DNA of 62,930 nt, filler included, from Octopus bimaculoides (taxonomy: Eukaryota), in assembly GCF_001194135.2 (NCBI RefSeq). It is 5 parts of 4 records of this genome, joined end to end, with 100 filler letters (N's around TTAATTAATTAA, not from the genome) between each part and the next. Parts side by side here need not be neighbours in the genome. Positions count along the whole stretch, not along the records: positions 1 to 23,350 come from NC_068981.1; 4 more parts are not named here. One strand, 5' to 3'. Numbering within the stretch: position 1 is the first letter of the stretch; the number at the start of each line of letters is the position of its first letter. Below the pieces are notes generated by a model. The model was not told the origin of the DNA. It saw nothing but the letters and a program-made list of their open reading frames with translations, and made no database searches. Shown one piece after another: positions 2,951 to 22,468 of the stretch. The translations under genes and the position numbers were made by a program.

Positions 2951-3775
2951 AAACAAAAATGTAGTAACTGATACACAAGCACTCAGCAAACTGTGTACTC
3001 AACTTGTTCAATCGGTCAACATGTTTGCAAGCCACCAGTATCTGAAGAGACACATGCATGTCCATATAATGATTACCGCTTTCTCTCACGGAACCCTCTT
3101 TTGTCATTCACAAAAGAATCCATCAGAGATATATATTTATATATATAAAAGCCGATTGAGAGTCTTGTTAGAACATCAGACGGTTTGCCTGACGGAGTGT
3201 CGTATGTTATTGTTCTGACACCACGTGAGAAATAGCAGAAAAAATAAATGCATCAACTCAGTGCTAAAATTTAAAGTGACCAACATCGTACGGGTCGGTA
3301 CTGAATTCCTGAAGAAACACTTATTTCTCGCTAGAAGAAAAGCATTTTATATGTGACTTAAAGTTTATGCATGGGTATGTCGGGTAGATTAGAAAATGAT
3401 GACAATATCAACATGGTCTCGCCTGGATTCCTGACCACTGCATCAAGTCATGTCTTAATGGGCATGCTCTTGCAATTCAAAAGCAAGAGATAGCTCGTCA
3501 ATAAACGAGATAATTAAGTCCTTAACGATGCCATTCTTCTGTAGAGAACATAACATGTGTAATCAGCTGTCCAAAATTATCATCGGGATACTACCGCCTA
3601 TAAAGACATGATAGTGTTTCTAATTCCCTATGCCTTGCCGACTGCAGATAAGACTGACCTGGGGTAAATATAAGCAGCACCTCTGCAATTGATGGGATAC
3701 AAAATATGAGCTCAAAGAATATTGGTGAAACATTCCCACGAAGACGTTTTGTAAGCGCAAAAACGACCTGACATA

Positions 3776-5045
3776 CAGGGGTTGGACAAAATAATGGAAG
3801 CACCTAGCATCATAGCATCATAATTTTGAAATATCTGTAAAACCGTCAAAAGCTTGTTTTTTTATGTTTTTTTTTATATTTTTAGTGTTGCTTAATATTT
3901 TTTGCTAAAATTGCTGTTGCTTTTCAGATATCATCAGAAAAATGTAATTAAAATTCATTAAAATGACAGATCTATCGGACTTTCAATGAGGTCAAATTGT
4001 TAGTGCTCGTATGGCAGGCGCTAGCGTAACGAAAACAGCCGAAATGTTTGGTATATCAAGAAGTAATGTCTCGAAAGTAATGACAGCTTTTGAGAAAGAG
4101 GAAAAACCCTCCTCGTCGAAAATAAACTCCGGAAGAAAACCAAAACTTTTAGATAGGGAACGTCGGACACTTACACGAATTGTTAGAAAGGATCACAAAA
4201 GTACAGCTCCCAAAATTACTGCACAGCCTAATGACCATCTCAAGAACCTAGTTTCCACAAAAGCTGTTCGCTGGGAGCTGCACAAAGCCGGATTTCATAG
4301 GTGGGCTGCAATCAGAAAACCACTACTTTCAAAAACAAACGTTGCAAAGCGTTTAGAGTGGAATAAAAACCTACTGAATTGGTCCTTAGAAAAGTGGAAG
4401 AATGTTATTTTCTCGGACGAGTCATCCTTTACCTTATTTCCGACCACCGGCCGAGTATACGTGTAGAGACATCCAAAAGAAGCATTTGACACAGGCTACC
4501 TTCTTCCAACTGTTAAACATGGAAGAGGATCTGTGATGATCTGGTTGGGGGCTATATCTTGGGAATCCGCCGGCCCAATGCTTTCCCTTCATGACGGAAT
4601 TAATAGTCAAGGCTATTTAAGAATTTTATCTGATAAAATTCATCCTATGGTTGCGGAACTGTTTCTGGAGGGACACAGAATCTTTCAGGATGATAATGCA
4701 CCAATTCACGCAGCTAAAGTTGTTACTGAATGGCACGAGGAACATTGTAGTGAAGTTAAACATCTTATCTTACCACCGCAGTCCCCAGATCTCAATATTA
4801 TTGAACACTTATGGTGCATTTTAGAAAAACAAGGAGTCGATAACCTCCACCATCATCACTACAAGAACTGGAGACTGTTTTATCTGAAGACTGGACAAAA
4901 ATTCCTTTGGCAATAATTGAAACTTTGTAGGAGTCTATACCTCGTAGAATTCAAGCTGTAATTACTGCCAAAGGCGGTCCTACCCAGTATTCAAATAAAT
5001 TCGTTTGACATTTTAAGGTGTTTCCATTATTTTGTCCAACCCCTG
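3776..5045 (+). mobile_element. Full-length Tc1/mariner DNA transposon, DD36E type
   Basis: 30-bp TIRs CAGGGGTTGGACAAAATAATGGAA(G/A)CACCT with 1 mismatch; TA at 3774-75 and 5046-47; 1270 bp; transposase inside. Confidence 0.95.
3963..4993 (+). pseudogene. Tc1 transposase pseudogene (HTH plus DD36E catalytic domain)
   Basis: MTDLSDFQ*GQIVSARMAGAS.., FSDES, FQDDNAPIH, SPDLNIIEHLW, ends GGPTQY. Two in-frame stops and a frameshift near 4830. There are 36 residues between the second D and the E. Confidence 0.9.
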
Positions 5046-5287
5046 TATTTATTTGGGAAAGAAAAGAAAAGTTATGTATAGTCATAGAGATAATTTACAC
5101 TGCAGATGTGAACGTATCTTCGAAAATCAGTGAGAAGAATATCTATGGACAACAGCATGTAAACCTGCCACTCCTCTACCTAGGATTATTCATATGAATA
5201 ATCGTTGGTGCTCTAGGTTATGTTAATACGTAAGCCACAATCCGAAGAAACCATGGTTTTTAAACAAAGAAAGAGGTGGATAGCGTG

Positions 5288-5442
5288 AAGCGTAGGAGTG
5301 GCTGTGTTGTAAGTAGCTTGCTTCCGAACAACATGGTTTCGGGTTCAGTCCCGGGCAAGTGTCTTCTACTCTAGCTTCGGGCTGACCAAAGCCTTATGAG
5401 TGGATTTGGTAGACGGAAACTGAAAGAAGCCCGTCGTATATA

Positions 5443-5497
<55 letters not shown>

Positions 5498-5703
5498 GTT
5501 TGTGTATCTGAGTTTGTTCCCCCTAACATCGCTTAACAACCGATGCTGGTGTGTTTACGTCCCCGTAACACTAGCGGTTCGGCAAAAGGGTCCCATAGAA
5601 TAAGTACTACGCATACAAAGATTAAGTTCTAGGGTCGATTTGCTCGACTAAAGGCGGTGCTCCAGCATGGCCACAGTCAAATGAGTGAAACAAGTAAAAG
5701 AGT
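5288..5703 (+). mobile_element. tRNA-derived SINE family A (head AGCGTAGGAGTGGCTGTG.., internal microsatellite, tail ..GTCAAATGAGTGAAACAAGTAAAAGAG)
   Basis: Pol III A/B box-like head; homologous copies at 5890, 10181, 46543 and 58346. Confidence 0.85.
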
Positions 5704-5889: not shown

Positions 5890-6169
5890 TCTTGTATTTG
5901 CTTCAGCCATTTGACTGCGGCCATGCTGAACCACCGCCTTCAGTGGAACAAATCGACCCGAGGACTTATTCTTTGTAAGCCTAGAACTCATTCTATCAGA
6001 TGATTTTTTGCCGAACCGCTAAGTTTCCGTCTACCAAATCCACTTACAAGTCTATAGTCGGTCTGAGGCTATAGTAGAAGACACCTGCCCAAAGTGCGAC
6101 ACAGGAGGATTGAAATCAGAACCATGTGGTTGGGAAGCAAACTTCTTACCACACAGCCACGCCTACGCT
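5890..6169 (-). mobile_element. SINE family A, internal microsatellite segment deleted
   Basis: Reverse-complement homology to 5288-5703. Confidence 0.85.
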
Positions 6170-6262
6170 TATGTATGTATATATAAATGTCAAAGCCTGT
6201 TAACGAATGGTAATATGCGCATGTATTTGATATATAGCTATATAAGTATGTTCATTTGCATA

Positions 6263-6299
<37 letters not shown>

Positions 6300-7156
6300 C
6301 GTGTATGCATGTGGCTGTGTGTGTGTGTGTGTGTGTGTGTTATATGGTGTGAATGTGTGAAATACATAGAGAACGAGTATTTCATGCTCGAAAATTCATT
6401 TAATATTTTATTCATACACAAGTGTTTGTATTATCTACGCAGTTGTTTAGTGTGTGTGTGTGNNNNNNNNNNNNNNNNNNNNNNNNNNNNNNNNNNNNNN
6501 NNNNNNNNNNNNNNNNNNNNNNNNNNNNNNNNNNNNNNNNNNNNNNNNNNNNNNNNNNNNNNNNNNNNNNNNNNNNNNNNNNNNNNNNNNNNNNNNNNNN
6601 NNNNNNNNNNNNNNNNNNNNNNNNNNNNNNNNNNNNNNNNNNNNNNNNNNNNNNNNNNNNNNNNNNNNNNNNNNNNNNNNNNNNNNNNNNNNNNNNNNNN
6701 NNNNNNNNNNNNNNNNNNNNNNNNNNNNNNNNNNNNNNNNNNNNNNNNNNNNNNNNNNNNNNNNNNNNNNNNNNNNNNNNNNNNNNNNNNNNNNNNNNNN
6801 NNNNNNNNNNNNNNNNNNNNNNNNNNNNNNNNNNNNNNNNNNNNNNNNNNNNNNNNNNNNNNNNNNNNNNNNNNNNNNNNNNNNNNNNNNNNNNNNNNNN
6901 NNNNNNNNNNNNNNNNNNNNNNNNNNNNNNNNNNNNNNNNNNNNNNNNNNNNNNNNNNNNNNNNNNNNNNNNNNNNNNNNNNNNNNNNNNNNNNNNNNNN
7001 NNNNNNNNNNNNNNNNNNNNNNNNNNNNNNNNNNNNNNNNNNNTTCCGCGGAAACAATAGAAAATCTTGTACAATTTCTCTGTCTGCTCTTTTTCTCGAA
7101 TCATTGTCTCTGTTTCTTTTTTCTCTCTATTTCTCTCACTTTCATTCCCCCTCATC

Positions 7157-8407: not shown

Positions 8408-9275
8408 CAGGGTGTTTCAAAAAATTTGATATCATTTCGCAATCTAATAACTTTGCCAGTTCTTGTTCAAATTTTAACACCATGTGTAGAAATAGGTCAA
8501 GATTTTATGTTTAATGTTTGATATGTTTATCTTTTCAGATATAGAAATGGCATCCACTGGAAGAGAAAAGGCGTTCTGTGCGTTGGAGTATGCTCGAACA
8601 CAGTCGAACAAAATTGTGCAACATGCATTTGTGAGAGAGTTCTCTAAAAAGTCACCAACTGCAATGCAGATTTGAACAGGTCACAAAAAATTCAAAGAGG
8701 AAGGCTGTCTGTGCAGGGCAACAGGATCTGGACCACCACTAACATCGGAAGAGACGGTCGACCGGGTTCACCAAAAACTCATGGCAAGCCCCATGAAGTC
8801 CATAAGAAGAACAAGTCTGGAAACCCAGATTCCTCCAACGGCAGTTTGGTGCACCCTAAGTAAACGCTTGCTAATGAAATCCTACAAGCTGCAGCTTGTT
8901 GAGGCCATAATGGCAGATGACAAGTGAAATCAAAAACATGGGTATATGTCCCCAACCTTCTTCCTGCGAACCTACAGGAACTCGAGCAGAGAATCACTAC
9001 CGCGCCGGAGACTGGTACCCAAGATATGCGACAGCGTGTTTGGAAGGAGCTGGACTACTGACTTGGCTAGTACCGTGTCTCAGACAGTACACATATTGAA
9101 CACTTTTGAAATCGTTCGTGGAATCCACATACCTTTGAATTTCTCAGTGAAATTTAGAGTAGAGGAATAAATCTTATGCTGCTCAAAATTAAGCCTGTTT
9201 AGTTTCATTTGCTTAGACTATGTAGTTTCTGTGATATTTACATCTCAAATGAAATAAAATTTTTGAAACACCCTG
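8408..9275 (+). mobile_element. Non-autonomous Tc1/mariner (rosa-like, DUF4817-type N-terminus) deletion derivative inserted at the end of a (TG)n tract
   Basis: TIRs CAGGGTGTTTCAAAAA..TTT; TA on both sides. MASTGREKAFCALEYARTQS..KSYKLQLVEAI..DDK is joined directly to the C-terminal '..YVP..LPANLQELEQRIT..RVWKELDY..THIEHF'; the catalytic domain is absent. Confidence 0.85.
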
Positions 9276-10126
9276 TATATGTGTATATATCTATCTATTT
9301 AACTATATATATATATATATNNNNNNNNNNNNNNNNNNNNNNNNNNNNNNNNNNNNNNNNNNNNNNNNNNNNNNNNNNNNNNNNNNNNNNNNNNNNNNNN
9401 NNNNNNNNNNNNNNNNNNNNNNNNNNNNNNNNNNNNNNNNNNNNNNNNNNNNNNNNNNNNNNNNNNNNNNNNNNNNNNNNNNNNNNNNNNNNNNNNNNNN
9501 NNNNNNNNNNNNNNNNNNNNNNNNNNNNNNNNNNNNNNNNNNNNNNNNNNNNNNNNNNNNNNNNNNNNNNNNNNNNNNNNNNNNNNNNNNNNNNNNNNNN
9601 NNNNNNNNNNNNNNNNNNNNNNNNNNNNNNNNNNNNNNNNNNNNNNNNNNNNNNNNNNNNNNNNNNNNNNNNNNNNNNNNNNNNNNNNNNNNNNNNNNNN
9701 NNNNNNNNNNNNNNNNNNNNNNNNNNNNNNNNNNNNNNNNNNNNNNNNNNNNNNNNNNNNNNNNNNNNNNNNNNNNNNNNNNNNNNNNNNNNNNNNNNNN
9801 NNNNNNNNNNNNNNNNNNNNNNNNNNNNNNNNNNNNNNNNNNNNNNNNNNNNNNNNNNNNNNNNNNNNNNNNNNNNNNNNNNNNNNNNNNNNNNNNNNNN
9901 NNNNNNNNNNNNNNNNNNNNNNNNNNNNNNNNNNNNNNNNNNNNNNNNNNNNNNNNNNNNNNNNNNNNNNNNNNNNNNNNNNNNNNNNNNNNNNNNNNNN
10001 NNNNNNNNNNNNNNNNNNNNNNNNNNNNNNNNNNNNNNNNNNNNNNNNNNNNNNNNNNNNNNNNNNNNNNNNNNNNNNNNNNNNNNNNNNNNNNNNNNNN
10101 NNNNNNNNNNNNNNNNNNNNNNNNNN

Positions 10127-10180: not shown

Positions 10181-10327
10181 GACGGGCTTCTTTTAGTTTC
10201 CCTCAACCGAATCCACTCACAAGGCTTTGGTCAGCCCACGGCTATAGTAGAAGACACTTGCCTAAGGTGTCATGCAGTGGGACTGAACCCGAAACCATGG
10301 TTCTTACCACGCAGCCGCGCCTGCGCC
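10181..10327 (-). mobile_element. SINE family A 5' part (remainder in gap)
   Basis: Homology to 5288-5430. Confidence 0.8.
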
Positions 10328-11760
10328 TATAGGTTTAGATTTACTAAAGATTTCAGATCTCGAATTAAGCAGTACAGTGAAGTTTTGAGATCTAAAATAA
10401 ATGAGATGTTTCAGTTACGTACAGCCTGCATCTCTTTGATTGTGTGTAGTGCTTTACTTGGCTCTGTGTAGTGTAGAGTTGGTTTACAGATCCCATTAAC
10501 ATGCCTTTATTTTTATCCATGTGTCAGAAAGAAGACTAGTGGTTTGCGTATCTTTTAAAAAAAATTATTATCGCTTACACCAACGTAATTTTTTAATTTC
10601 CTTATTCCTTTATAGATAAATAAATAGTTAGCTAGATAGACAGATATTCCAAAATATGAGTGAGAGTGAGTGTTGGCTTATTACTTAGAACACTAACATC
10701 TTGTGTGTCCTTGTTAATCTTCTTATAAATAGTTATATATTTTCGTTTCTTTTAATTTCATTTGCAAAATTTTTGATGTGAATTCCTGTGTTAGACAGAT
10801 ATGGAGTAGAGAGGGCATGTCTTTGAAATCGAAAATGGCAACGAAATAACTTTCAAAAACTTAGTTGATTAACTGATTGACCGAAAGACTAATCAAACGA
10901 TTACTTAACTGGTTAAATGTTTAATTAATAATAAAATACTAAAACAGAAACAATGCGTGTGTTTATTATTGGCACAATGACCCTCCATGATACAACAAAG
11001 TTCTATATTTCGTTTGTGCTGTGCCTGAGTTTTGTAGTCGGAGATGCCTCGTTTCTGGCTTTAACCTTTCCGTCTTGGCCAGTTAGTTCCTTTCTGTCTT
11101 GGCCAGTTAAATATACTTGTATTTCTTACGATTTAAACGTTCATTTTGTCAATTCACTTACATAGGAAGAAGTTATATGCCAGAGATATCGTGTGTCCCA
11201 GCCGTTGAAACAAGATGCACTGATACATATAAATCAAAAACTAATTATGTGAAATTAGTTCCAACATATGTGATTGAATTTATTGCTGTCACCATTGCAA
11301 TTACAATAAACAAAAGAAATAAACCAAATACTTTTGGATGAACAGAATCTCATCGTTGTTTTCTTTTATTGTCAAATAATAACAAGACAAATAATAATTA
11401 TTATTTTAAATACCGCTTATTATGTGATCGTTTATTATATCACAGCTTATTTTTGTTGACAGCTCAACTACACATACAACAGAGAGAATGGAAGAAGAAC
11501 GAACATCGAGTGCAATTTTTTTTTATATATTTTTTAAGAAAAACCAGCCAATGGAAGAAAGGGGTGAAGTACAAATACCTCTAAATAACTTCTAGTAACT
11601 CATATTTTGTTGTTATTTTATATTTTTCTTTTCTTTGCTTTATTTTTCTTTTCGCCTTCTCGCTAATGGCAGTTCCGTGGAATTGTTCTCCAAAAGGTGA
11701 AAATTGCTGCATATAAAAAAAACGTTCACACTAGTATTATAAAATTTTCAATTCTTTACG

Positions 11761-14162: not shown

Positions 14163-14805
14163 ATAATTATGCATATATATTTACATGTATGCGCGTATAT
14201 TCATATATATANNNNNNNNNNTATATATATATATATATAGTGAGAGAGAGAGAGAGGGGGATGGATGGATGGATGGATGGATGGATGGATATGTAGATAC
14301 ATACGTATATGCAAATTCGAAAAGAAATGTACTATATAGACGTGTATTTCGTGATCGGGTCCTTGTTGAGTATGAGAATAAGTGATTAGGAATCGTGTGT
14401 CTGACTTTCATATTAGTGTAACTCTGTTGATCCTCTTGTATGTCTTGGATTCTAGCAGTGACCCTTTCTACGTGTTGAATTATAGGAGACTGAAATGCTA
14501 GGCTTTATATGGGTCCCCGTTGTTGTTTAACTGTTCAGTCAATTCACAGCGTGTTTTGAATTCTAATTTCTTTAAAGTTTCAAATAGATTCAAAATTCTT
14601 TCAAGATACGGAAATTCAAAACCTTCAATGTGCTGCGAGTGTCTAGAATACTGGTACCAATGACATCTATGCGTAATTTTGTAATGTTATAGAGAAATGT
14701 GAAAACGTCTGGGCGTGGAGAAACGTTATAGAAAAAAGAAAATAAATCGCCATGATGATGGCTCTGACCTGTGATCTTTTTTATCGCATTTGTTAATATG
14801 CAGTA

Positions 14806-15450
14806 TAAGGCGGCGAGCGGACAGAATCATTAGCCCGCCTGGCACAATTTTAGCGGCATTTCGTTCGTCCTTATATTCTCAGTTCAAATTCCGCCGATTT
14901 CGGCCTTCATCCTTTCGGGGTTGATAAAATAAGTACCAGTTGAGTACTAGGGTCGATGTAATTGGATTATTCCTTCCCCCGGTTTCTGAACTAGTGCCAA
15001 AATTTGGCAGCATAAGGCGGTAANNNNNNNNNNCGTTAGCACGCCGGACAAAATGCTTAGCAGTATTTCGTTCGCCTTTACGTCCTGAGTTCAAATTCTG
15101 CAGAGGTCGATTTTGTCTTTCATTTTTTCGTGGTCGGTGAAACAAGTTGAATACTGGAGTCGATGTAATTGGCTTCCACCCCCCCCAACTCACACGCAAA
15201 GAATCTCAAGCCTTGTGCTTATAGTAGAAAGGATTATTATTCGGTAGCAAAGGCGGTGAGCTGGCAGAATAGTTTGCACGCCGGACAAAATTCTTAGCGG
15301 CATTTCTTTCGTTTCTATGTTCTGAGTTCAAATATCGCTGAGGTCGACCTTTTAGGGTCGATAGAAATAATACCAGTTATGCACTGTGATCCATGTAATA
15401 AACTAGCCCCTTTCCCCAAAATGTCAGGCCTTGTGCCTATTGTCGAATGA
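14806..15450 (+). mobile_element. Three head-to-tail SINE family B copies (central GCCTTTCATCCTTTCGGGGTCGATAAAATAAGTACCAG domain)
   Basis: Repeated AAGGCGG(C/T)GAGC heads at about 14806, 15014 and 15250. Confidence 0.85.
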
Positions 15451-15754: not shown

Positions 15755-16057
15755 AACTGGTTTCAAATTTTGGCACGAGGCCAGCAATTTCAGGGAGGGT
15801 TAAATCGATTATATTGCCTCCCTCAGTGCTCAACTACTACTCATTTTATCGGCTCCAAAAGGATGAAAGAGAAAGTCGATCTCGATGGATTATAAACTCA
15901 GAACGCACTGACGGACGAAATGCCGCAAAGCATTTTGCTCGGCGTGCTAACGATTCTTATTTCTTTATTGCCCACAAGGGGCTAAACATAGGGGGGGACA
16001 AACAAGGAAAGACAAAGAGATTAAGTCGATTACATCGACCCCAGTGCGTAACTGGTA
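15755..16057 (-). mobile_element. SINE family B copy plus an upstream-fused B variant with a distinct tail ending AATAAAGAAATA
   Basis: 15755-15957 is a B body and tail (head clipped); 15958-16057 is the variant tail, running into a gap. Confidence 0.8.
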
Positions 16058-16597
16058 NNNNNNNNNNNNNNNNNNNNNNNNNNNNNNNNNNNNNNNNNNN
16101 NNNNNNNNNNNNNNNNNNNNNNNNNNNNNNNNNNNNNNNNNNNNNNNNNNNNNNNNNATGCTTCGATATGGAAGCTTATTCATTTATATAATTGAATCTC
16201 AGACCACGTTCACTTCATAATAGGATTTTTTTATTAGCCTTTTATCCCAGCCCCTACATTAATAAAAGATCTAAGATCGTTTCAGTCTGCTTCAGTCCTT
16301 ACCAAGTAATGTTTACTTTATGCCCAGTCACAATTACACGGTCATATTTTTAACAGGTTATTCATTCTGTTATAAAGTTTTATGTTTCCTATATAATGAG
16401 CATTTATTTCGCTTGCTAAATGAGGTAATGTAACAACAGACAATAAGTTTATATTTGATATCCGTTAGTTGACAAGTTTGACGTCTGTTAGCAATATCAA
16501 CTTCATATTTCACCTGAACAAATTTGCCTTTGTCCTTCTAGGCTTGACGAGTACACGCACATACACACACGTACACACACACACACANNNNNNNNNN

Positions 16598-16658
<61 letters not shown>

Positions 16659-17210
16659 AGAGTGTCGTACGTATTTTTGCATTTATATCTCGTCTCATGA
16701 ATATTTTAACGTCTTCCGACAGAAATCAAGTCGTACTTGTTGAATGAAAAGTTGTTGTTATCGGTCTTGTTGTTGTTCTTTTCTAATTAAAACCTATCTC
16801 ACAGGCTAAAATTTCATTTTAGTAATATCGCAATACTAAAACGCTTATAGCCTCAAACATCTACAGCTGCTGCTTATATACACGGTCTTACTACGACAAG
16901 TATTACAGTGTTTTGTCACTTTTAATCAAATTTTTCCATTCAAATTCAGCTAATAATTTCTATTCTTTATCAGCAACGTCTATTCCCACCTACCTCTTGG
17001 AGTGATATTTAAAGTAATTTGGTATATTTCATCAAAACACTATTTTTATATAATCATTTCAACAAGTCATATTTATGTAATTACTCCAAGCTGTTTTGTA
17101 CAATTATATCAACAAACTATATTTATACATCATCGATACCAGACTATTGTCGTACGCGTTCATAATCATTTTTATTATATATATATATCTAAATCACAAA
17201 ACTATCTTCA

Positions 17211-17275
<65 letters not shown>

Positions 17276-17348
17276 NNNNNNNNNNNNNNNNNNNNNNNNN
17301 NNNNNNNNNNNNNNNNNNNNNNNNNNNNNNNNNNNNNNNNNNNNNNNN

Positions 17349-17383
<35 letters not shown>

Positions 17384-18245
17384 ATGGCGTCAAAAATTGA
17401 AAAGTGAATTCAAGTGAATATCACAAAATATTCTGATACTGTTCGGTCTACTCGAAGATATGGGAAAATATTGCCGAAAAATATATCTTTGGAATTGTAG
17501 CAAATGTTACGAATGAACTCGTTAAGTTGACGTATATATCTATAGTCATAATTTAAGTTAACTGATTGATTAAAATTACATTTTGTTCTCATTGTTTATC
17601 TGGAACTTATCCCTATGCAAGCAAACTAATGATCAGGGTAGGTTCATATGCTACAGCATGTCCTCTGTTCGGATAACAAAATATATTTAGGACTATATTA
17701 TCTAATCCGTCTGTTTAATTTTTAAGCGATAAAAATAATAATTCTCCTAGGAATATTTGATAATTTATCTGCCAGAGTCAGTTACCTCGTAAATCACTAC
17801 TCTCTAGAAGAAATTTTAAGTGTAGAATATGCAGGTAGATAATTATCCCTTTTAATCTTTGTTGTACGTCTTAATACAATGAGCGTTCCTTTCTGGATTA
17901 AGTGAAGTAACTTCAATATGCTTTGGTTAGAGGAGTACAAATAGCTAGCGTGATACTCACAGATGATATATGAATATAGGTAAATCAAAGCAAAAAGGTG
18001 AGTTTGGTCTTCTGCATTGCCTTGGTTTCTACATGTACTGTGTGACCTTTTCAACTATAGAATTTCAACTATAGAATCCAATTAAATACAACTCGGACTA
18101 CAGTATGTGTACTCTTTACAGACTTTTTTTTTGTTTGAGTGTGCAGATATATAGAAAGATACATGAAGATCGAAATACTGGTTACTCGTCTTACAATTCA
18201 GCTCACAGTAAATAATCATATAATATGCATACATAAATAACTATC

Positions 18246-18289
<44 letters not shown>

Positions 18290-18349
18290 ATTCTATCTAG
18301 ATAAATATATATATATAGAGAGAGAGAGAGAGTGTGTGTGTGTGTGTGT

Positions 18350-18545
18350 GGTCACAAAAGTGACAGAAGGTACAGACTATCACCGCTTTTGCTGAAAATA
18401 AGAGCTAAAACAACTCAAAAGCCACAAAAGCACTGTCTTAATGACTGACAAAGGGAGGTAAGTCCCCAGCGACATCTTAATCCTCATCAGCGACTCTTAA
18501 CGCCTGGGGTTAAAAGTCAACTACTTCTCTATGTCTTATAAGAAC
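18350..18545 (-). repeat. Inverted partial copy of the 18717-18948 segment (ribozyme half deleted)
   Basis: The reverse complement aligns with 18717-18948; it retains GTCG-CTGATGA-GGATTAAG but lacks the AATCC-GAAA-TCGCGATC half. Confidence 0.85.
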
Positions 18546-18630
18546 TACCTCTGTTAGCCTTATAACACACACACACACACACACACACACGGAAATGAAG
18601 CTAGTTTTGTGATTTAGATATATATAAAAA

Positions 18631-18972
18631 TTTGCCTTTAGGTTCTAATTGCTAATAAGCCACCTTTTTTAGTTTGTTGTTTACATTTTTGAAAATCAGC
18701 ACGTTTTCATTGATTTTTCTTATAAGACTAACAGTGGTAGTTAGGTTTAACCCTAGGCGTTAATAGTCGCTGATGAGGATTAAGGTGGTCTATATCAAAA
18801 TCCGAAATCGCGATCTGACTATGTATGCTGGAGACTTATCTCATTTTGTCAGTCATTAAGACAATGCTTTTGTGGCTTTTGAGTTGTTTTAAACCTTATT
18901 TTTTAGAAAACGCGGTGCTAGTCAGTACCCTCTGTAAATTTTATGACTGTAATTTTGCCTTTAGGTTCTAAT
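18631..18972 (+). mobile_element. 323-bp non-coding hammerhead-containing unit plus 19-bp start of a second unit (retrozyme-like or solo PLE terminal repeat)
   Basis: TTTGCCTTTAGGTTCTAAT occurs at 18631 and 18954; a hammerhead lies between them; no coding similarity seen. Confidence 0.6.
18763..18822 (+). ncRNA. Minimal type-I hammerhead ribozyme
   Basis: Stem I ATAGTCG/TGACTAT (7 bp), core CTGATGA (18770-76), stem II GGATT/AATCC, GAAA (18804-07), palindromic stem III ATCGCGAT, cleavage triplet AUC. Predicted cut after 18815. Confidence 0.88.
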
Positions 18973-19427
18973 GATTTGCTGGTTGTATGATTTAAGTTGG
19001 CACATATAAACTTACACATCTAATTATATGCAAGTACGCATAGACAAATGTATATATACACACATTGATACTCGATCCATACAAACTGTAGATCCTATTC
19101 AGAGATGGTTCTCAGAGCAGCGTATGTATACAAGAAGAGCACAAGTGGGGTTCAAAATTCACAACAGCTGTTTCGGCAGCATTTTAGATTACTTCATGGC
19201 AAGAATCCACCATCTGCAGGTGATTTTTTAAACAAATAACTTTGAAGCAAGTCGACTTATATTTTATACTTTACCTCCTCTGCTTAAAATAACCAGAAGA
19301 TAAATTTCTTGCCGTGTAATCAAAGAATGCATGAATGCATCAATAAAATGCTGCCGAAATATCTGTTGTGAATTTAAAACCTCCACTTGTGTTCTTCTGT
19401 TATATGTATATGTTTATGTATACATAT

Positions 19428-19493
<66 letters not shown>

Positions 19494-20039
19494 GTGCATA
19501 TAGATATATATGAGGTCGTGTAGGGTATTTCCAGAGAAGCAGTCAATCCTATCTTTGGGCTATCACCACCGTCAGATTCCAGACTAATACCGAAATTCTT
19601 CAGACGTAGAAAATCTTGGTTTTACGACGGTAAAACTGGTTTGTGAGTGTAGCGAAGAGTCAAATATAATCCAAATATTAAGACAAAGAAATACTTTAAT
19701 ACATCTTTAACGATCATTTACGATTGTTTCTGTACTAACTCTGCTTGCAACGCCAATTTACGCGATATTCAAAGTGAACCGTTACATAATATTCGAGATT
19801 TTAGATATTAGAGTGGCACTTTATCAGACTTGCATCATAGGTCCGTTCTCACATTGTGACATTGTTTCTTGCTTACGTCACGAGGAAGCAAAAAATCGAA
19901 TAAAAGTATGGTTAGGAGATGAATAATTAATATAGAGATCATGTGGGAAGGATGAAAAAGAAGAAAAATACGAAGAAGAATACGAAGAAAAAGAACGAAA
20001 AGGAGGGGGAGGCTGAGGATATAAAGAATGAGGAGAAGA

Positions 20040-20720
20040 CAATAAATAGCTAACCAGTGTACCTGGACGAAATATTCTCAGAATGGTCGGTCAGTATTAC
20101 GTTGTCACCGGCATCAAATTTCATTTGGTAAGTGAAAGGATTTTTCAGTTTACCACAAGCGACAATAAACAGACAAAATTGTGTAGAGGTTTGTAGAACG
20201 GCTAGAGTAACAGTTCTCAACACTCGATACATTTGTTAGTTCTTTACCAGATGTGTCTGTAAATCTTTACTAACATGTCTTCTGTTGGCAAAGCAGACGC
20301 AGTGTGCGGTGTTGATGACAATAAAGGATTCAGCGTGTAAGATACACAACATACTTAATTTCTTTCATTATAGTAGTATTAACATAGAATGACATAGATC
20401 GGTATTATTGCCATCATTTTCATTGCGCTACACTCACCCAATACGATAGTATTACAAGACACTATACATACATGACAGCTATTCATTGTAAAGCAAGATG
20501 CACACAATACATGTGTTTCTTCAGTTAATAGAGCGAAGGAACCTCCACGACTCTGTGCTGCTTCTCCAGGAGAGTGCGAAACCATTGAAACAACTTTCAC
20601 AACTTCACATGAAGCGTTCTAGACAGGGTACCTCTTTATTCACCTAGGGTTCGTATTTACCGTTTCTTCCTCTGTTTGGCACTGCACCTGCCCAGTCAGC
20701 TCGCAGTAGTTATCAACAGG
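20040..20720 (-). pseudogene. Possible degenerate hAT transposase relic
   Basis: Broken frames 'KKHMYCVHLAL', 'EDMLVKIYRHIW', 'FYKPLHNFVCLLSLVVN*KIL' echo hAT 'C..H.LHLA', '..LVKIY.HF', 'LL.H...RWLSL...V.RIL'. No TIRs found. Confidence 0.3.
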
Positions 20721-21271
20721 AAAAATTACCTTTCTGATTGTCGCAACTAGCGATATACTTTGTTATTGATATTCAAGCCTTTGACTGTATGAGTGTGTAT
20801 GTGAAACGAGTGGCGACAACAAAAAAAGGTAATGCTCTTGTCTGCATCATACTGAGTAACGTAGACTTGTGAAGGGCACAGCACAACGGGAAATGTTTGG
20901 CTACACCTTCACCCCCAAACACTATCCGAATTACAGAGACCATAGCCCTGACCCCAAATACAAAAACGAAAAGAACAATTTCTTACATCCAAAACGATAC
21001 CAGAACTCTGCTATCCACCAACAACATGTCTGAATAAAAAATGCAACACTCACCATCTAAACGTTACGAAACGAAAATTAAACAACAAACAGCAGTATAA
21101 TAATGAAACAAAATCATATGCGTACAAATCACACATTCTCGTACTCTCCACTTAAGTGAGCAATACTAGGAGGTACAATCAAAGTCTAACCATTACAAAA
21201 TGGATAGCAACACAAAATACTCCCATAAAGGAACAATTATAGTGATTATTCATCATTATTAACTTAACTTT

Positions 21272-21493
21272 AAGGCGACAAGCTGGCAGGATTGTTAGCA
21301 CTCTCGACGAAATGCTGAGTAGTATTTTGCCCGTCGCTACGTTCTGAGTTCAAATTTCGCCGCGGTCGACTTTACTTTTCATCCTTTCGCGGTCGATGAA
21401 ATGAGTACGAGTTAAGCACTGGGGTAGATGTAATCGACTAGACCTCACCCTCAAAAAATTTCAGGCCTCGTGCCTATTGTAAAAAGGATTATT
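21272..21493 (+). mobile_element. SINE family B
   Basis: Full head, body and tail homology to other B copies. Confidence 0.85.
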
Positions 21494-22250: not shown

Positions 22251-22468
22251 AAGTCGATGAGTTGGCAGAATCGTTAGAATGCGGGAATCGTTAGCATGCT
22301 TAGCGGTATTTCGTCCGTCTTCGCGTCGTTAGGTCAAATTCAGACGCGGTTGACTTTACCTTTCGTCCTTTCGGGGACCATAAAATAAGTGCCAGTTGAA
22401 CAATGTGGTCGATGTAATGGACTTCCCCCTCCCCGACGTTCCTGGCCTTGTGCTAAATTTTGAAACAG
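22251..22468 (+). mobile_element. SINE family B (..CCTTGTGCTAAATTTTGAAAC tail)
   Basis: Homology to other B copies. Confidence 0.8.

What the first reader, a model, noticed from the sequence alone, without database searches (positions are those of the whole stretch)
18631..18972. Intact minimal hammerhead ribozyme in a 323-bp non-coding unit: candidate cephalopod retrozyme / circRNA element
Seen in sequence: every type-I hammerhead element is present at 18763-18822. These are a 7-bp stem I (ATAGTCG/TGACTAT, extendable with GCGT/ATGC), the CUGAUGA and GAAA cores, a perfect 5-bp stem II with a 17-nt loop, an AUC cleavage triplet, and a stem III that is the palindrome ATCGCGAT. That palindrome is too tight to fold alone but suits intermolecular pairing. 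A 19-bp sequence repeats 323 bp apart, so the unit looks like one monomer plus the start of the next, with no coding remnant. Established: minimal type-I hammerheads with palindromic stem III occur in Penelope-like elements and cleave as dimers. Metazoan non-LTR retrozymes are 170-400-nt hammerhead-bearing tandem units that produce abundant circular RNAs and are thought to borrow PLE enzymes. Inference: this is a retrozyme-like non-autonomous element, and several PLE fragments in this window are potential enzyme donors.
Basis: partly seen in the sequence, partly recalled or inferred. Interest (0 to 1): 0.85.

Follow-up and report, generated by a model that had tools for sequence, protein, structure and literature searches.

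The report
Solitary hammerhead-ribozyme retroelement copy in octopus DNA
The hammerhead ribozyme motif is real and complete, but it lies in one isolated 301-bp retroelement copy flanked by a target-site duplication, not in a tandem array, so it is an ordinary relic of the known Penelope-like/retrozyme lineage and cannot make circular RNA at this locus.

Summary
Observation confirmed. A complete type-I hammerhead sits at 18757-18828 (+), with cleavage after C18815. A structural descriptor finds it once in the piece and in none of 1000 shuffles. Rfam supports it only weakly: HH9, 20.7 bits against a gathering score of 52. The 19/22-nt direct repeat 323 bp apart is real, and no protein domain lies nearby.

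Interpretation partly supported. There is no tandem array. Its homology to the + copy stops at 18947, where the downstream direct repeat begins, and it runs on into (CA)n instead. The repeat is therefore best read as a target-site duplication around one 301-bp insertion (18650-18950), not the start of a next monomer.

A head-to-head truncated neighbour, microsatellite flanks and insertion ends away from the cleavage site match published Penelope-like element (PLE) insertion signatures. With one intact ribozyme whose stem III pairs only between two molecules, this locus cannot excise or circularise an RNA.

No RT/GIY-YIG remnant exists in the piece. No other copy could be retrieved, because no cephalopod genome was searchable. 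Truncated PLE end versus solo monomer of a non-autonomous retrozyme family stays open. New member of a known kind; low to moderate interest.

The parts
18628..18649 (.). Upstream copy of the direct repeat AAATTTGCCTTTAGGTTCTAAT; proposed target-site duplication, left side
   Evidence: the repeat finder family D7, 21/22 identical to 18951-18972. The exact 19-mer is at 18631-18649.
18650..18950 (+). 301-bp non-coding hammerhead-bearing retroelement copy (35% GC)
   Evidence: Bounded by the direct repeat. No Pfam domain in six frames. Homology with the inverted copy covers about 18707-18947. GC content.
18757..18828 (+). Type-I hammerhead ribozyme motif. Stem I 18757-18760 + 18763-18769 / 18816-18822 + 18825-18828. 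Core CUGAUGA 18770-18776. Stem II 18777-18781 / 18799-18803, loop 18782-18798. GAAA 18804-18807. Palindromic helix III AUCGCGAU 18807-18814. Cleavage between C18815 and U18816.
   Evidence: Sequence. Descriptor: 1 hit, against 0 hits in 1000 shuffles. Rfam HH9 alignment with the same helices, 20.7 bits, below gathering. Helix III forms only as an intermolecular duplex, -11.5 kcal/mol.
18951..18972 (.). Downstream copy of the direct repeat; proposed target-site duplication, right side
   Evidence: Homology to the inverted family copy ends at 18947, just before it.
18351..18552 (-). Older inverted, 5'-truncated copy of the same element. It keeps stem I 5' strand, CUGAUGA and stem II 5' strand. 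A 37-nt deletion removes the rest of loop II, the stem II 3' strand, GAAA, helix III, the cleavage site and the stem I 3' strand. It also carries a short internal duplication of about 25 nt near its 5' end.
   Evidence: Inverted repeats I1 (76 nt, 89%) and I19 (42 nt, 93%). blastn 18717-18947 vs 18544-18351. Alignments.
18332..18350 (.). (GT)n microsatellite abutting the 3' end of the inverted copy
   Evidence: Tandem Repeats Finder.
18565..18590 (.). [quoted passage not shown]
   Evidence: Tandem Repeats Finder.

Best explanation
Positions 18650-18950 are one solitary insertion of a short, non-coding retroelement sequence. It belongs to the hammerhead-bearing Penelope-like element (PLE)/retrozyme lineage. 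It was integrated by target-primed reverse transcription, which duplicated 19-22 bp of target.

It landed about 100 bp from an older, inverted, 5'-truncated copy of the same family whose ribozyme is now deleted.

In an RNA the motif would fold stems I and II around the CUGAUGA/GAAA core. Helix III would need a second hammerhead RNA, pairing through AUCGCGAU, before cleavage after C18815.

This locus has only one intact ribozyme and no tandem partner. It can at most cut a read-through transcript once. It cannot release or circularise a unit, so it is a relic copy and not an active retrozyme locus.

Shown: the motif, the repeat, the inverted copy, the absence of an array and the absence of coding sequence. 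Inferred: the integration mechanism, ribozyme activity and dimer dependence.

Not resolved: whether the family is the truncated 3'/pLTR (pseudo-LTR) end of a coding PLE or a non-autonomous derivative ('solo retrozyme'). I put these at roughly even odds. The canonical-type helix III and long helix I lean towards the retrozyme type. The genomic arrangement fits either.
For: - Complete catalytic core and helices.
- One descriptor hit, against 0 hits in 1000 shuffles.
- Rfam HH9 alignment with the same architecture.
- Helix III forms only as a duplex, -11.5 kcal/mol.
- The 21/22 direct repeat flanks the unit.
- Homology with the second copy stops at 18947, next to the repeat, and that copy continues into (CA)n.
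- The second copy is 5'-truncated and head-to-head with the first.
- No tandem array, no tRNA-like head, no protein domain.

Literature:
- Most genomic PLE-type hammerheads are solitary and 'probably related to truncated PLEs'. Pairs 100-700 bp apart on opposite strands are described (PMC4209133).
- PLE insertions show inverted 5'-truncated copies and a bias for microsatellite targets (PMC8557442).
- Head-to-head inverted pLTRs and solo pLTRs occur (PMC3846280).
- PLE reverse transcription starts about 90 nt 3' of the hammerhead cut, and cleavage is not needed for insertion (PMC11167929). This fits a 3' end 132-135 nt past the cut site and insertion ends that do not coincide with it.
- Octopus genomes carry recently active Penelope families (PMC13282606).
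- The window shares Tc1 and SINE-like repeat families with Octopus sinensis.
Against: - Only one intact ribozyme is available, so there is no covariation support.
- The Rfam score is far below gathering, and there is no hit at all in the wider scans.
- The monomer minimum-free-energy fold (-19.7 kcal/mol) pairs core nucleotides instead of adopting the hammerhead fold (-7.8).
- No RT/GIY-YIG sequence in the piece ties the unit to a PLE.
- The duplication of 19-22 bp is longer than the 8-10 bp reported for rotifer PLEs.
- The repeat flanks only the + copy. The head-to-head pair is therefore not one classic composite PLE insertion but two events.
- No other family copy could be retrieved, so copy number, consensus ends and association with ORFs are unknown.
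Confidence: 0.7

Rival explanations
1. One reading: the locus is a partial tandem (1.07 units of a 323-bp monomer) of an active non-LTR retrozyme. Transcripts would be cut by dimerising hammerheads and ligated into circular RNA.
For: Unit size, low GC content, lack of coding capacity and a canonical-type type-I hammerhead with a weak palindromic helix III all match published metazoan retrozymes (PMC7229834). The motif lacks the extra nucleotide between A9 and G10.1, and lacks the short helix I, that characterise minimal PLE hammerheads. It therefore looks more like the retrozyme/satellite type.
Against: - No array with a period near 323 bp.
- Only 19-22 nt are repeated.
- The inverted family copy does not continue into the repeat sequence.
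- There is only one intact hammerhead on this strand, while the published criterion needs at least two consecutive units.
- The unit fold is not unusually stable (z = -0.22), unlike the highly self-paired retrozyme circles described.
Confidence: 0.1
2. The motif is a chance hammerhead-like arrangement inside an unrelated interspersed repeat, with no ribozyme history.
For: Rfam finds nothing at gathering score, and nothing in an 801-nt scan. There is a single intact example and no covariation. The minimum-free-energy fold is not the hammerhead fold.
Against: - 0 of 1000 shuffles give any hit, even though the descriptor fixes only the 11 core nucleotides.
- G10.1-C11.1 and a palindromic helix III were not required by the descriptor but are present.
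- The second copy conserves the retained 5' half of the motif at 93%.
- The surrounding anatomy fits PLE-type insertions.
Confidence: 0.05
3. The inverted duplication, and possibly the flanking repeat, is an artefact of a gapped draft assembly, such as mis-joined haplotypes or collapsed repeats.
For: The piece has eight N gaps, one only 1 kb upstream at 17276-17348. PLE tandem/inverted structures are known to trouble short-read assemblies (PMC8557442).
Against: The two copies differ by about 10-19% substitutions plus a 37-nt deletion and a duplication. They are therefore not duplicated reads of one locus. No gap lies between 17349 and 23350.
Confidence: 0.05

Closest known systems
Hammerhead ribozymes of Penelope-like elements (pLTR-associated and dispersed 'min-HHRs'; Cervera & de la Pena 2014, PMC4209133; Lunse, Weinberg & Breaker 2017, cited in PMC7761336)
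   Same: - Type-I topology, G10.1-C11.1 and a palindromic helix III that implies action as a dimer.
- Mostly solitary genomic copies.
- Pairs on opposite strands a few hundred bp apart.
- An inverted 5'-truncated neighbour and microsatellite-rich flanks.
- Insertion ends unrelated to the cleavage site.
   Different: - No RT/GIY-YIG ORF is nearby.
- There is no extra nucleotide between A9 and G10.1.
- Helix I is long (7 + 4 bp), not 4-5 bp.
- Helix II is 5 bp, not 6-8 bp.
- A helix III/loop 3 is present, whereas most min-HHRs lack it.
Metazoan non-LTR retrozymes (Cervera & de la Pena 2020, PMC7229834; Li et al. 2026 preprint 10.64898/2026.07.22.740005)
   Same: - A non-coding unit of about 300 bp with low GC content.
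- A canonical-type type-I hammerhead with a weak palindromic helix III.
- A duplication longer than 4 bp.
- A presumed dependence on PLE enzymes.
- 'Solo retrozyme' monomers are recognised.
   Different: - Not in a tandem array and no second ribozyme on the same strand.
- No unusually stable self-paired fold.
- No expression data.
- Conserved loop 1/loop 2 tertiary-contact nucleotides were not assessed.
Newt satellite 2 and Schistosoma Sm-alpha hammerheads (classical type-I motifs that cleave as double hammerheads; Forster et al. 1988, as cited in PMC4209133)
   Same: Helix III has 2 bp plus a 4-nt palindromic loop that extends to an 8-bp intermolecular helix. Helix I of 6-7 bp is closed by a further stem.
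   Different: Those motifs lie in long tandem satellite or SINE-like arrays and have demonstrated cleavage. Here there is a single copy and no experimental data.
Rfam Hammerhead_HH9 (RF02275)
   Same: It is the best-scoring Rfam model, and the alignment reproduces stems I, II and III and the core.
   Different: The score is 20.7 bits against a gathering score of 52. HH9 is a conserved amniote intronic ribozyme, so this is not a member.

Membership tests
Hammerhead ribozyme, type I | Conserved core C3 U4 G5 A6 N7 G8 A9 ... G12 A13 A14, the A15.1-U16.1 pair, and H17 not G | tested here: met
   CUGAUGA 18770-18776, GAAA 18804-18807, A18807-U18814, C18815.
Hammerhead ribozyme, type I | Three helices around the core, with helix I open-ended | tested here: met
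   Stem I has 7 + 4 bp and stem II has 5 bp. Helix III has 2 bp plus a 4-nt loop, or 8 bp as a duplex. The Rfam HH9 alignment shows the same topology.
Hammerhead ribozyme, type I | Score at or above a curated Rfam hammerhead gathering threshold | tested here: not met
   0 matches at gathering. Best score is 20.7 bits against 52 for RF02275, and only in a 96-nt scan.
Hammerhead ribozyme, type I | Self-cleavage at the predicted site | not testable with these tools
   Needs in vitro transcription of monomer and dimer, or RNA-end mapping.
Hammerhead ribozyme, type I | Compensatory changes in the helices among related copies | tested here: inconclusive
   The only other copy has lost the 3' strands of stems I and II. 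No further copies were obtainable.
Metazoan non-LTR retrozyme | Tandem repeat of at least two consecutive units, each with a complete hammerhead | tested here: not met
   Tandem Repeats Finder finds only dinucleotide arrays. The repeat is 22 nt only. There is one hammerhead hit in the piece.
Metazoan non-LTR retrozyme | Non-coding unit of about 150-450 bp with GC below 45-50% | tested here: met
   301 bp (323 bp including one repeat), 35% GC. No Pfam domain.
Metazoan non-LTR retrozyme | Stable, highly self-paired predicted RNA | tested here: not met
   -63.5 kcal/mol against a shuffle mean of -62.3, z = -0.22.
Metazoan non-LTR retrozyme | Expression as linear and circular RNA of unit length | not testable with these tools
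Penelope-like element (terminal/pLTR fragment) | Hammerhead lies in a repeat that flanks an RT + GIY-YIG ORF in full-length copies | tested here: inconclusive
   No RVT or GIY-YIG hit in the piece. The open frame running through the 3' end (18825-18968) has no relative among 5.8 billion proteins. Full-length family members elsewhere could not be searched.
Penelope-like element (terminal/pLTR fragment) | Insertion architecture: 5'-truncated copies, an adjacent inverted (head-to-head) copy, microsatellite targets, and a target-site duplication | tested here: met
   An inverted 5'-truncated copy lies about 100 bp upstream. (GT)n and (AC)n flank it. A 21/22 direct repeat flanks the + copy. Features as described. 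Caveat: the repeat flanks one copy only, so these are two events.
Penelope-like element (terminal/pLTR fragment) | Minimal hammerhead traits: an extra nucleotide between A9 and G10.1, helix II of 6-8 bp, helix I of 4-5 bp, helix III absent or a tiny palindrome | tested here: inconclusive
   The palindromic helix III and G10.1-C11.1 are present. There is no extra nucleotide, helix I is 7 + 4 bp and helix II is 5 bp.
tRNA-derived SINE | tRNA-like head | tested here: not met
   ARAGORN finds no tRNA-like sequence in the piece.

The most novel reading that the evidence does not exclude
The unit is a solo monomer of a so far undescribed cephalopod non-LTR retrozyme family. That family would form tandem arrays elsewhere in octopod genomes and yield abundant circular RNAs of about 300 nt. 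In addition, head-to-head pairs such as this one would fold into imperfect double-stranded RNA hairpins of about 200 bp when read through (predicted -263 kcal/mol). Such hairpins would feed the unusually active A-to-I editing or small-RNA pathways of cephalopods.
Probability: 0.15. Interest if true: 0.45.

Novelty: new member of a known kind. Interest (0 to 1): 0.25.

Why it matters
Hammerhead ribozymes in PLE repeats and in retrozymes are well documented across metazoans. I found no paper in the held library that reports them in cephalopods. Octopus genomes do carry active Penelope families.

The locus is a clean, datable example: an intact ribozyme, a near-perfect duplication, and an older dead neighbour. 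It could seed a genome-wide family search. It does not change how these elements are understood, and by itself it gives no evidence for circular RNA in cephalopods.

Tried and rejected
1. Recovering other copies through spurious ORFs. A two-sequence alignment of the conserved open frame of both copies, searched against 5.8 billion proteins, found no candidate.

2. Exact-pattern scans.
- The ribozyme 5' half against metagenome contigs: 0 hits.
- The conserved 3' block against viral contigs: 0 hits.
- A 22-mer against metagenome contigs: two hits with no homology beyond 23-25 nt, so chance matches.

3. Reaching same-species DNA through the window's Tc1 transposase.
- The exact product is not on record.
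- Homologues led to an Octopus sinensis chromosome segment (L001) and an ENA contig (L002).
- These share Tc1 and SINE-like repeat families with the window but hold no copy of the unit and no convincing hammerhead; L002 gave only one weak relaxed-descriptor match.
- The reverse transcriptases on L002 are LINE-type, not PLE, so they were not usable as a PLE query.

The best 120 hits would be dominated by non-cephalopod PLEs.

5. tRNA-SINE origin is rejected. Rod-like viroid-style folding is rejected. The SCARNA7, mir-297, MIR854 and snoR79 sub-threshold Rfam hits in the region are driven by microsatellite or low-complexity sequence.

Full report
THE OBSERVATION

The sequence at 18757-18828 (+) holds every element of a type-I hammerhead:
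- an outer stem, GCGT 18757-18760 / ATGC 18825-18828;
- a 2x2 internal loop;
- an inner stem I, ATAGTCG 18763-18769 / TGACTAT 18816-18822 (7 bp, with G.U next to the core);
- CUGAUGA at 18770-18776;
- stem II, GGATT 18777-18781 / AATCC 18799-18803, with a 17-nt loop;
- GAAA at 18804-18807;
- the palindrome AUCGCGAU at 18807-18814;
- C17 at 18815.

I wrote a descriptor that fixes only the core and asks for the three helices. It finds this site and nothing else on either strand of the 23-kb piece. It finds no site in 1000 dinucleotide-preserving shuffles. A looser descriptor adds nothing.

Rfam is much less supportive. There are no matches at gathering score in the piece. There is no hammerhead hit in an 801-nt permissive scan. 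Only a 96-nt scan gives a sub-threshold match, to Hammerhead_HH9 (20.7 bits, gathering 52, E = 0.0026). Its alignment does reproduce the same helices.

Helix III does not fold within one molecule. Two copies pair through the palindrome with -11.5 kcal/mol. The monomer minimum-free-energy structure keeps stems I and II but pairs core nucleotides (-19.7 against -7.8 kcal/mol for the hammerhead fold). This is common for hammerheads and is not decisive.

The direct repeat is real. Positions 18628-18649 and 18951-18972 match 21/22, with an exact 19-mer and 323 bp spacing.

A second copy of the same sequence lies head-to-head just upstream, on the minus strand, at about 18351-18552. The matching blocks are 76 nt at 89% and 42 nt at 93%, within 232 aligned columns.

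It is 5'-truncated relative to the + copy and carries a short internal duplication. It also has a 37-nt deletion. That deletion removes the rest of loop II, the stem II 3' strand, GAAA, helix III, the cleavage site and the stem I 3' strand. Its ribozyme is dead.

(GT)n abuts one end and (AC)n lies a few bases beyond the other.

TANDEM MONOMER OR SINGLE INSERTION?

Tandem Repeats Finder finds no array with a period near 323 bp. No other copy exists in the piece.

The inverted copy supplies an independent marker for the element's 3' boundary. Homology runs to 18947 and then stops. The + copy continues, after TGT, into the 22-nt repeat. The inverted copy continues into (CA)n.

The repeat is therefore flanking DNA duplicated on insertion, not the first bases of a second monomer. 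The element is 18650-18950: 301 bp, 35% GC.

CODING CONTENT

Six-frame translations of 17350-20750 give no Pfam hit at E up to 1. All stop-free stretches of 40 aa or more in the rest of the piece give only a Tc1/mariner transposase at 3990-4913.

So 'no coding remnant' holds. 'PLE fragments in this window' does not hold for this piece.

The only open frame running through the 3' end of the unit (18825-18968) is partly conserved in the second copy. It has no relative among 5.8 billion proteins, so nothing suggests it is the N-terminus of a PLE ORF.

ORGANISM

The Tc1 copy is 86% identical to one on an Octopus sinensis chromosome. Several SINE-like repeat families are shared with that locus. The window is therefore octopod.

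Octopus vulgaris has some 30 recently active Penelope families (PMC13282606).

COMPARISON WITH WHAT IS KNOWN

- Cervera & de la Pena 2014 report thousands of PLE-type hammerheads per metazoan genome. Most are solitary and 'probably related to truncated PLEs'. They explicitly describe pairs 100-700 bp apart on opposite strands.
- Craig et al. 2021 and Arkhipova et al. 2013 describe inverted 5'-truncated copies next to the direct repeat. Most are head-to-head. They also describe solo pLTRs, target-site duplications and a bias for microsatellite targets.
- Frangieh et al. 2024 show that a PLE reverse transcriptase starts about 90 nt downstream of the hammerhead cut. They also show that cleavage is not needed for insertion. 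Here the 3' end lies 132-135 nt past the cut, and neither insertion end coincides with the cleavage site.

All of this fits integration by PLE machinery.

Against a simple 'truncated PLE' label, the motif is closer to the canonical metazoan type-I design than to minimal PLE hammerheads:
- helix I is long and closed by a further stem;
- helix III is 2 bp with a 4-nt palindromic loop;
- there is no extra nucleotide after A9.

That canonical design is the one found in retrozymes and satellite repeats. The recent preprint by Li et al. argues that retrozymes derive from PLE pLTRs. It recognises 'solo retrozyme' monomers but defines an active element by at least two consecutive ribozyme-bearing units. 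That criterion is not met here.

The unit's predicted fold is also no more stable than shuffles (z = -0.22), unlike published retrozyme circles.

MECHANISM

Most likely, a transcript of a family member was reverse-transcribed at a staggered nick. This produced the 301-bp copy and its 19-22 bp duplication. The insertion lies beside an older copy in a microsatellite-rich spot.

The ribozyme is intact in sequence, but it needs a partner hammerhead to build helix III. None exists in cis. At this locus it can at most cut a read-through transcript once, and no unit can be excised or circularised.

These steps are inferred. Only the anatomy is shown.

WHAT REMAINS OPEN

I could not search any cephalopod genome at the DNA level. 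Protein-word, metagenome and viral scans found no further copies. The octopus DNA I could fetch held none.

The following are therefore unknown:
- copy number;
- whether arrays exist elsewhere;
- whether full-length copies encode RT/EN;
- whether the helices covary.

VERDICT

This is a new member of a known kind, of modest interest mainly as a seed for a family-level search in cephalopods.

Noticed in passing
window 18351-18950: If transcribed as one RNA, the head-to-head pair is predicted to fold into an imperfect hairpin of about 200 bp (-263 kcal/mol). Such a hairpin is a possible substrate for A-to-I editing or small-RNA pathways in an octopod.
   Followed up: partly
window 17180-17241 and 18565-18626 (third, weaker copy 6226-6290): A 62-nt inverted repeat, 97% complementary, made of a dinucleotide run ((TG)n at 17216-17241, (CA)n at 18565-18590) plus the unique sequence GGAAATGAAGCTAGTTTTGTGATTTAGATATATAT. 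It brackets a 1.3-kb segment that ends with the inverted hammerhead copy. This could be a microsatellite-associated repeat family or the terminal inverted repeats of an unknown element. One arm runs into the N gap at 17276-17348.
   Followed up: partly
window 3990-4913 (+): Tc1/mariner transposase pseudogene (HTH_Tnp_Tc3_2 + DDE_3) with its reading frame interrupted by a stop at about 4464-4466. The surrounding element (3773-5048) is 86% identical in DNA to a copy on Octopus sinensis CM016861.1 (L001 10184-11470).
   Followed up: yes
window 14788-15440, 15760-16052, 21271-21492, 22296-22464: Clustered copies, in both orientations, of a SINE-like repeat (translations contain NERNAAKHFVRRAN). 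The copies match a similar cluster at L001 17104-18310 in Octopus sinensis at 68-83%.
   Followed up: partly
window 5226-5393 (-), 6023-6262 (+), 10183-10330 (+): A second interspersed repeat family (translations contain GFGQP...VEDTCP...LNPKP). Matches in L001 (6693-6962, 15618-15762) abut or overlap the first copy (window 5299-5701). It is usually next to microsatellites and N gaps.
   Followed up: no
window 8496-8924 (+): Stop-free stretches that look like the N-terminal helix-turn-helix part of a mariner-type transposase (for example ...TSEETVDRVHQKLMASPMKSIRRTSLETQIPPTAVW...). No Pfam hit at E up to 0.1, so the identity is uncertain.
   Followed up: partly
window 6463-7043, 9321-10126, 16058-16157, 17276-17348 and four 10-nt gaps: The piece is a gapped draft assembly with eight N runs, most of them adjoining microsatellites. 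Repeat structures near the gaps should be treated with caution.
   Followed up: yes
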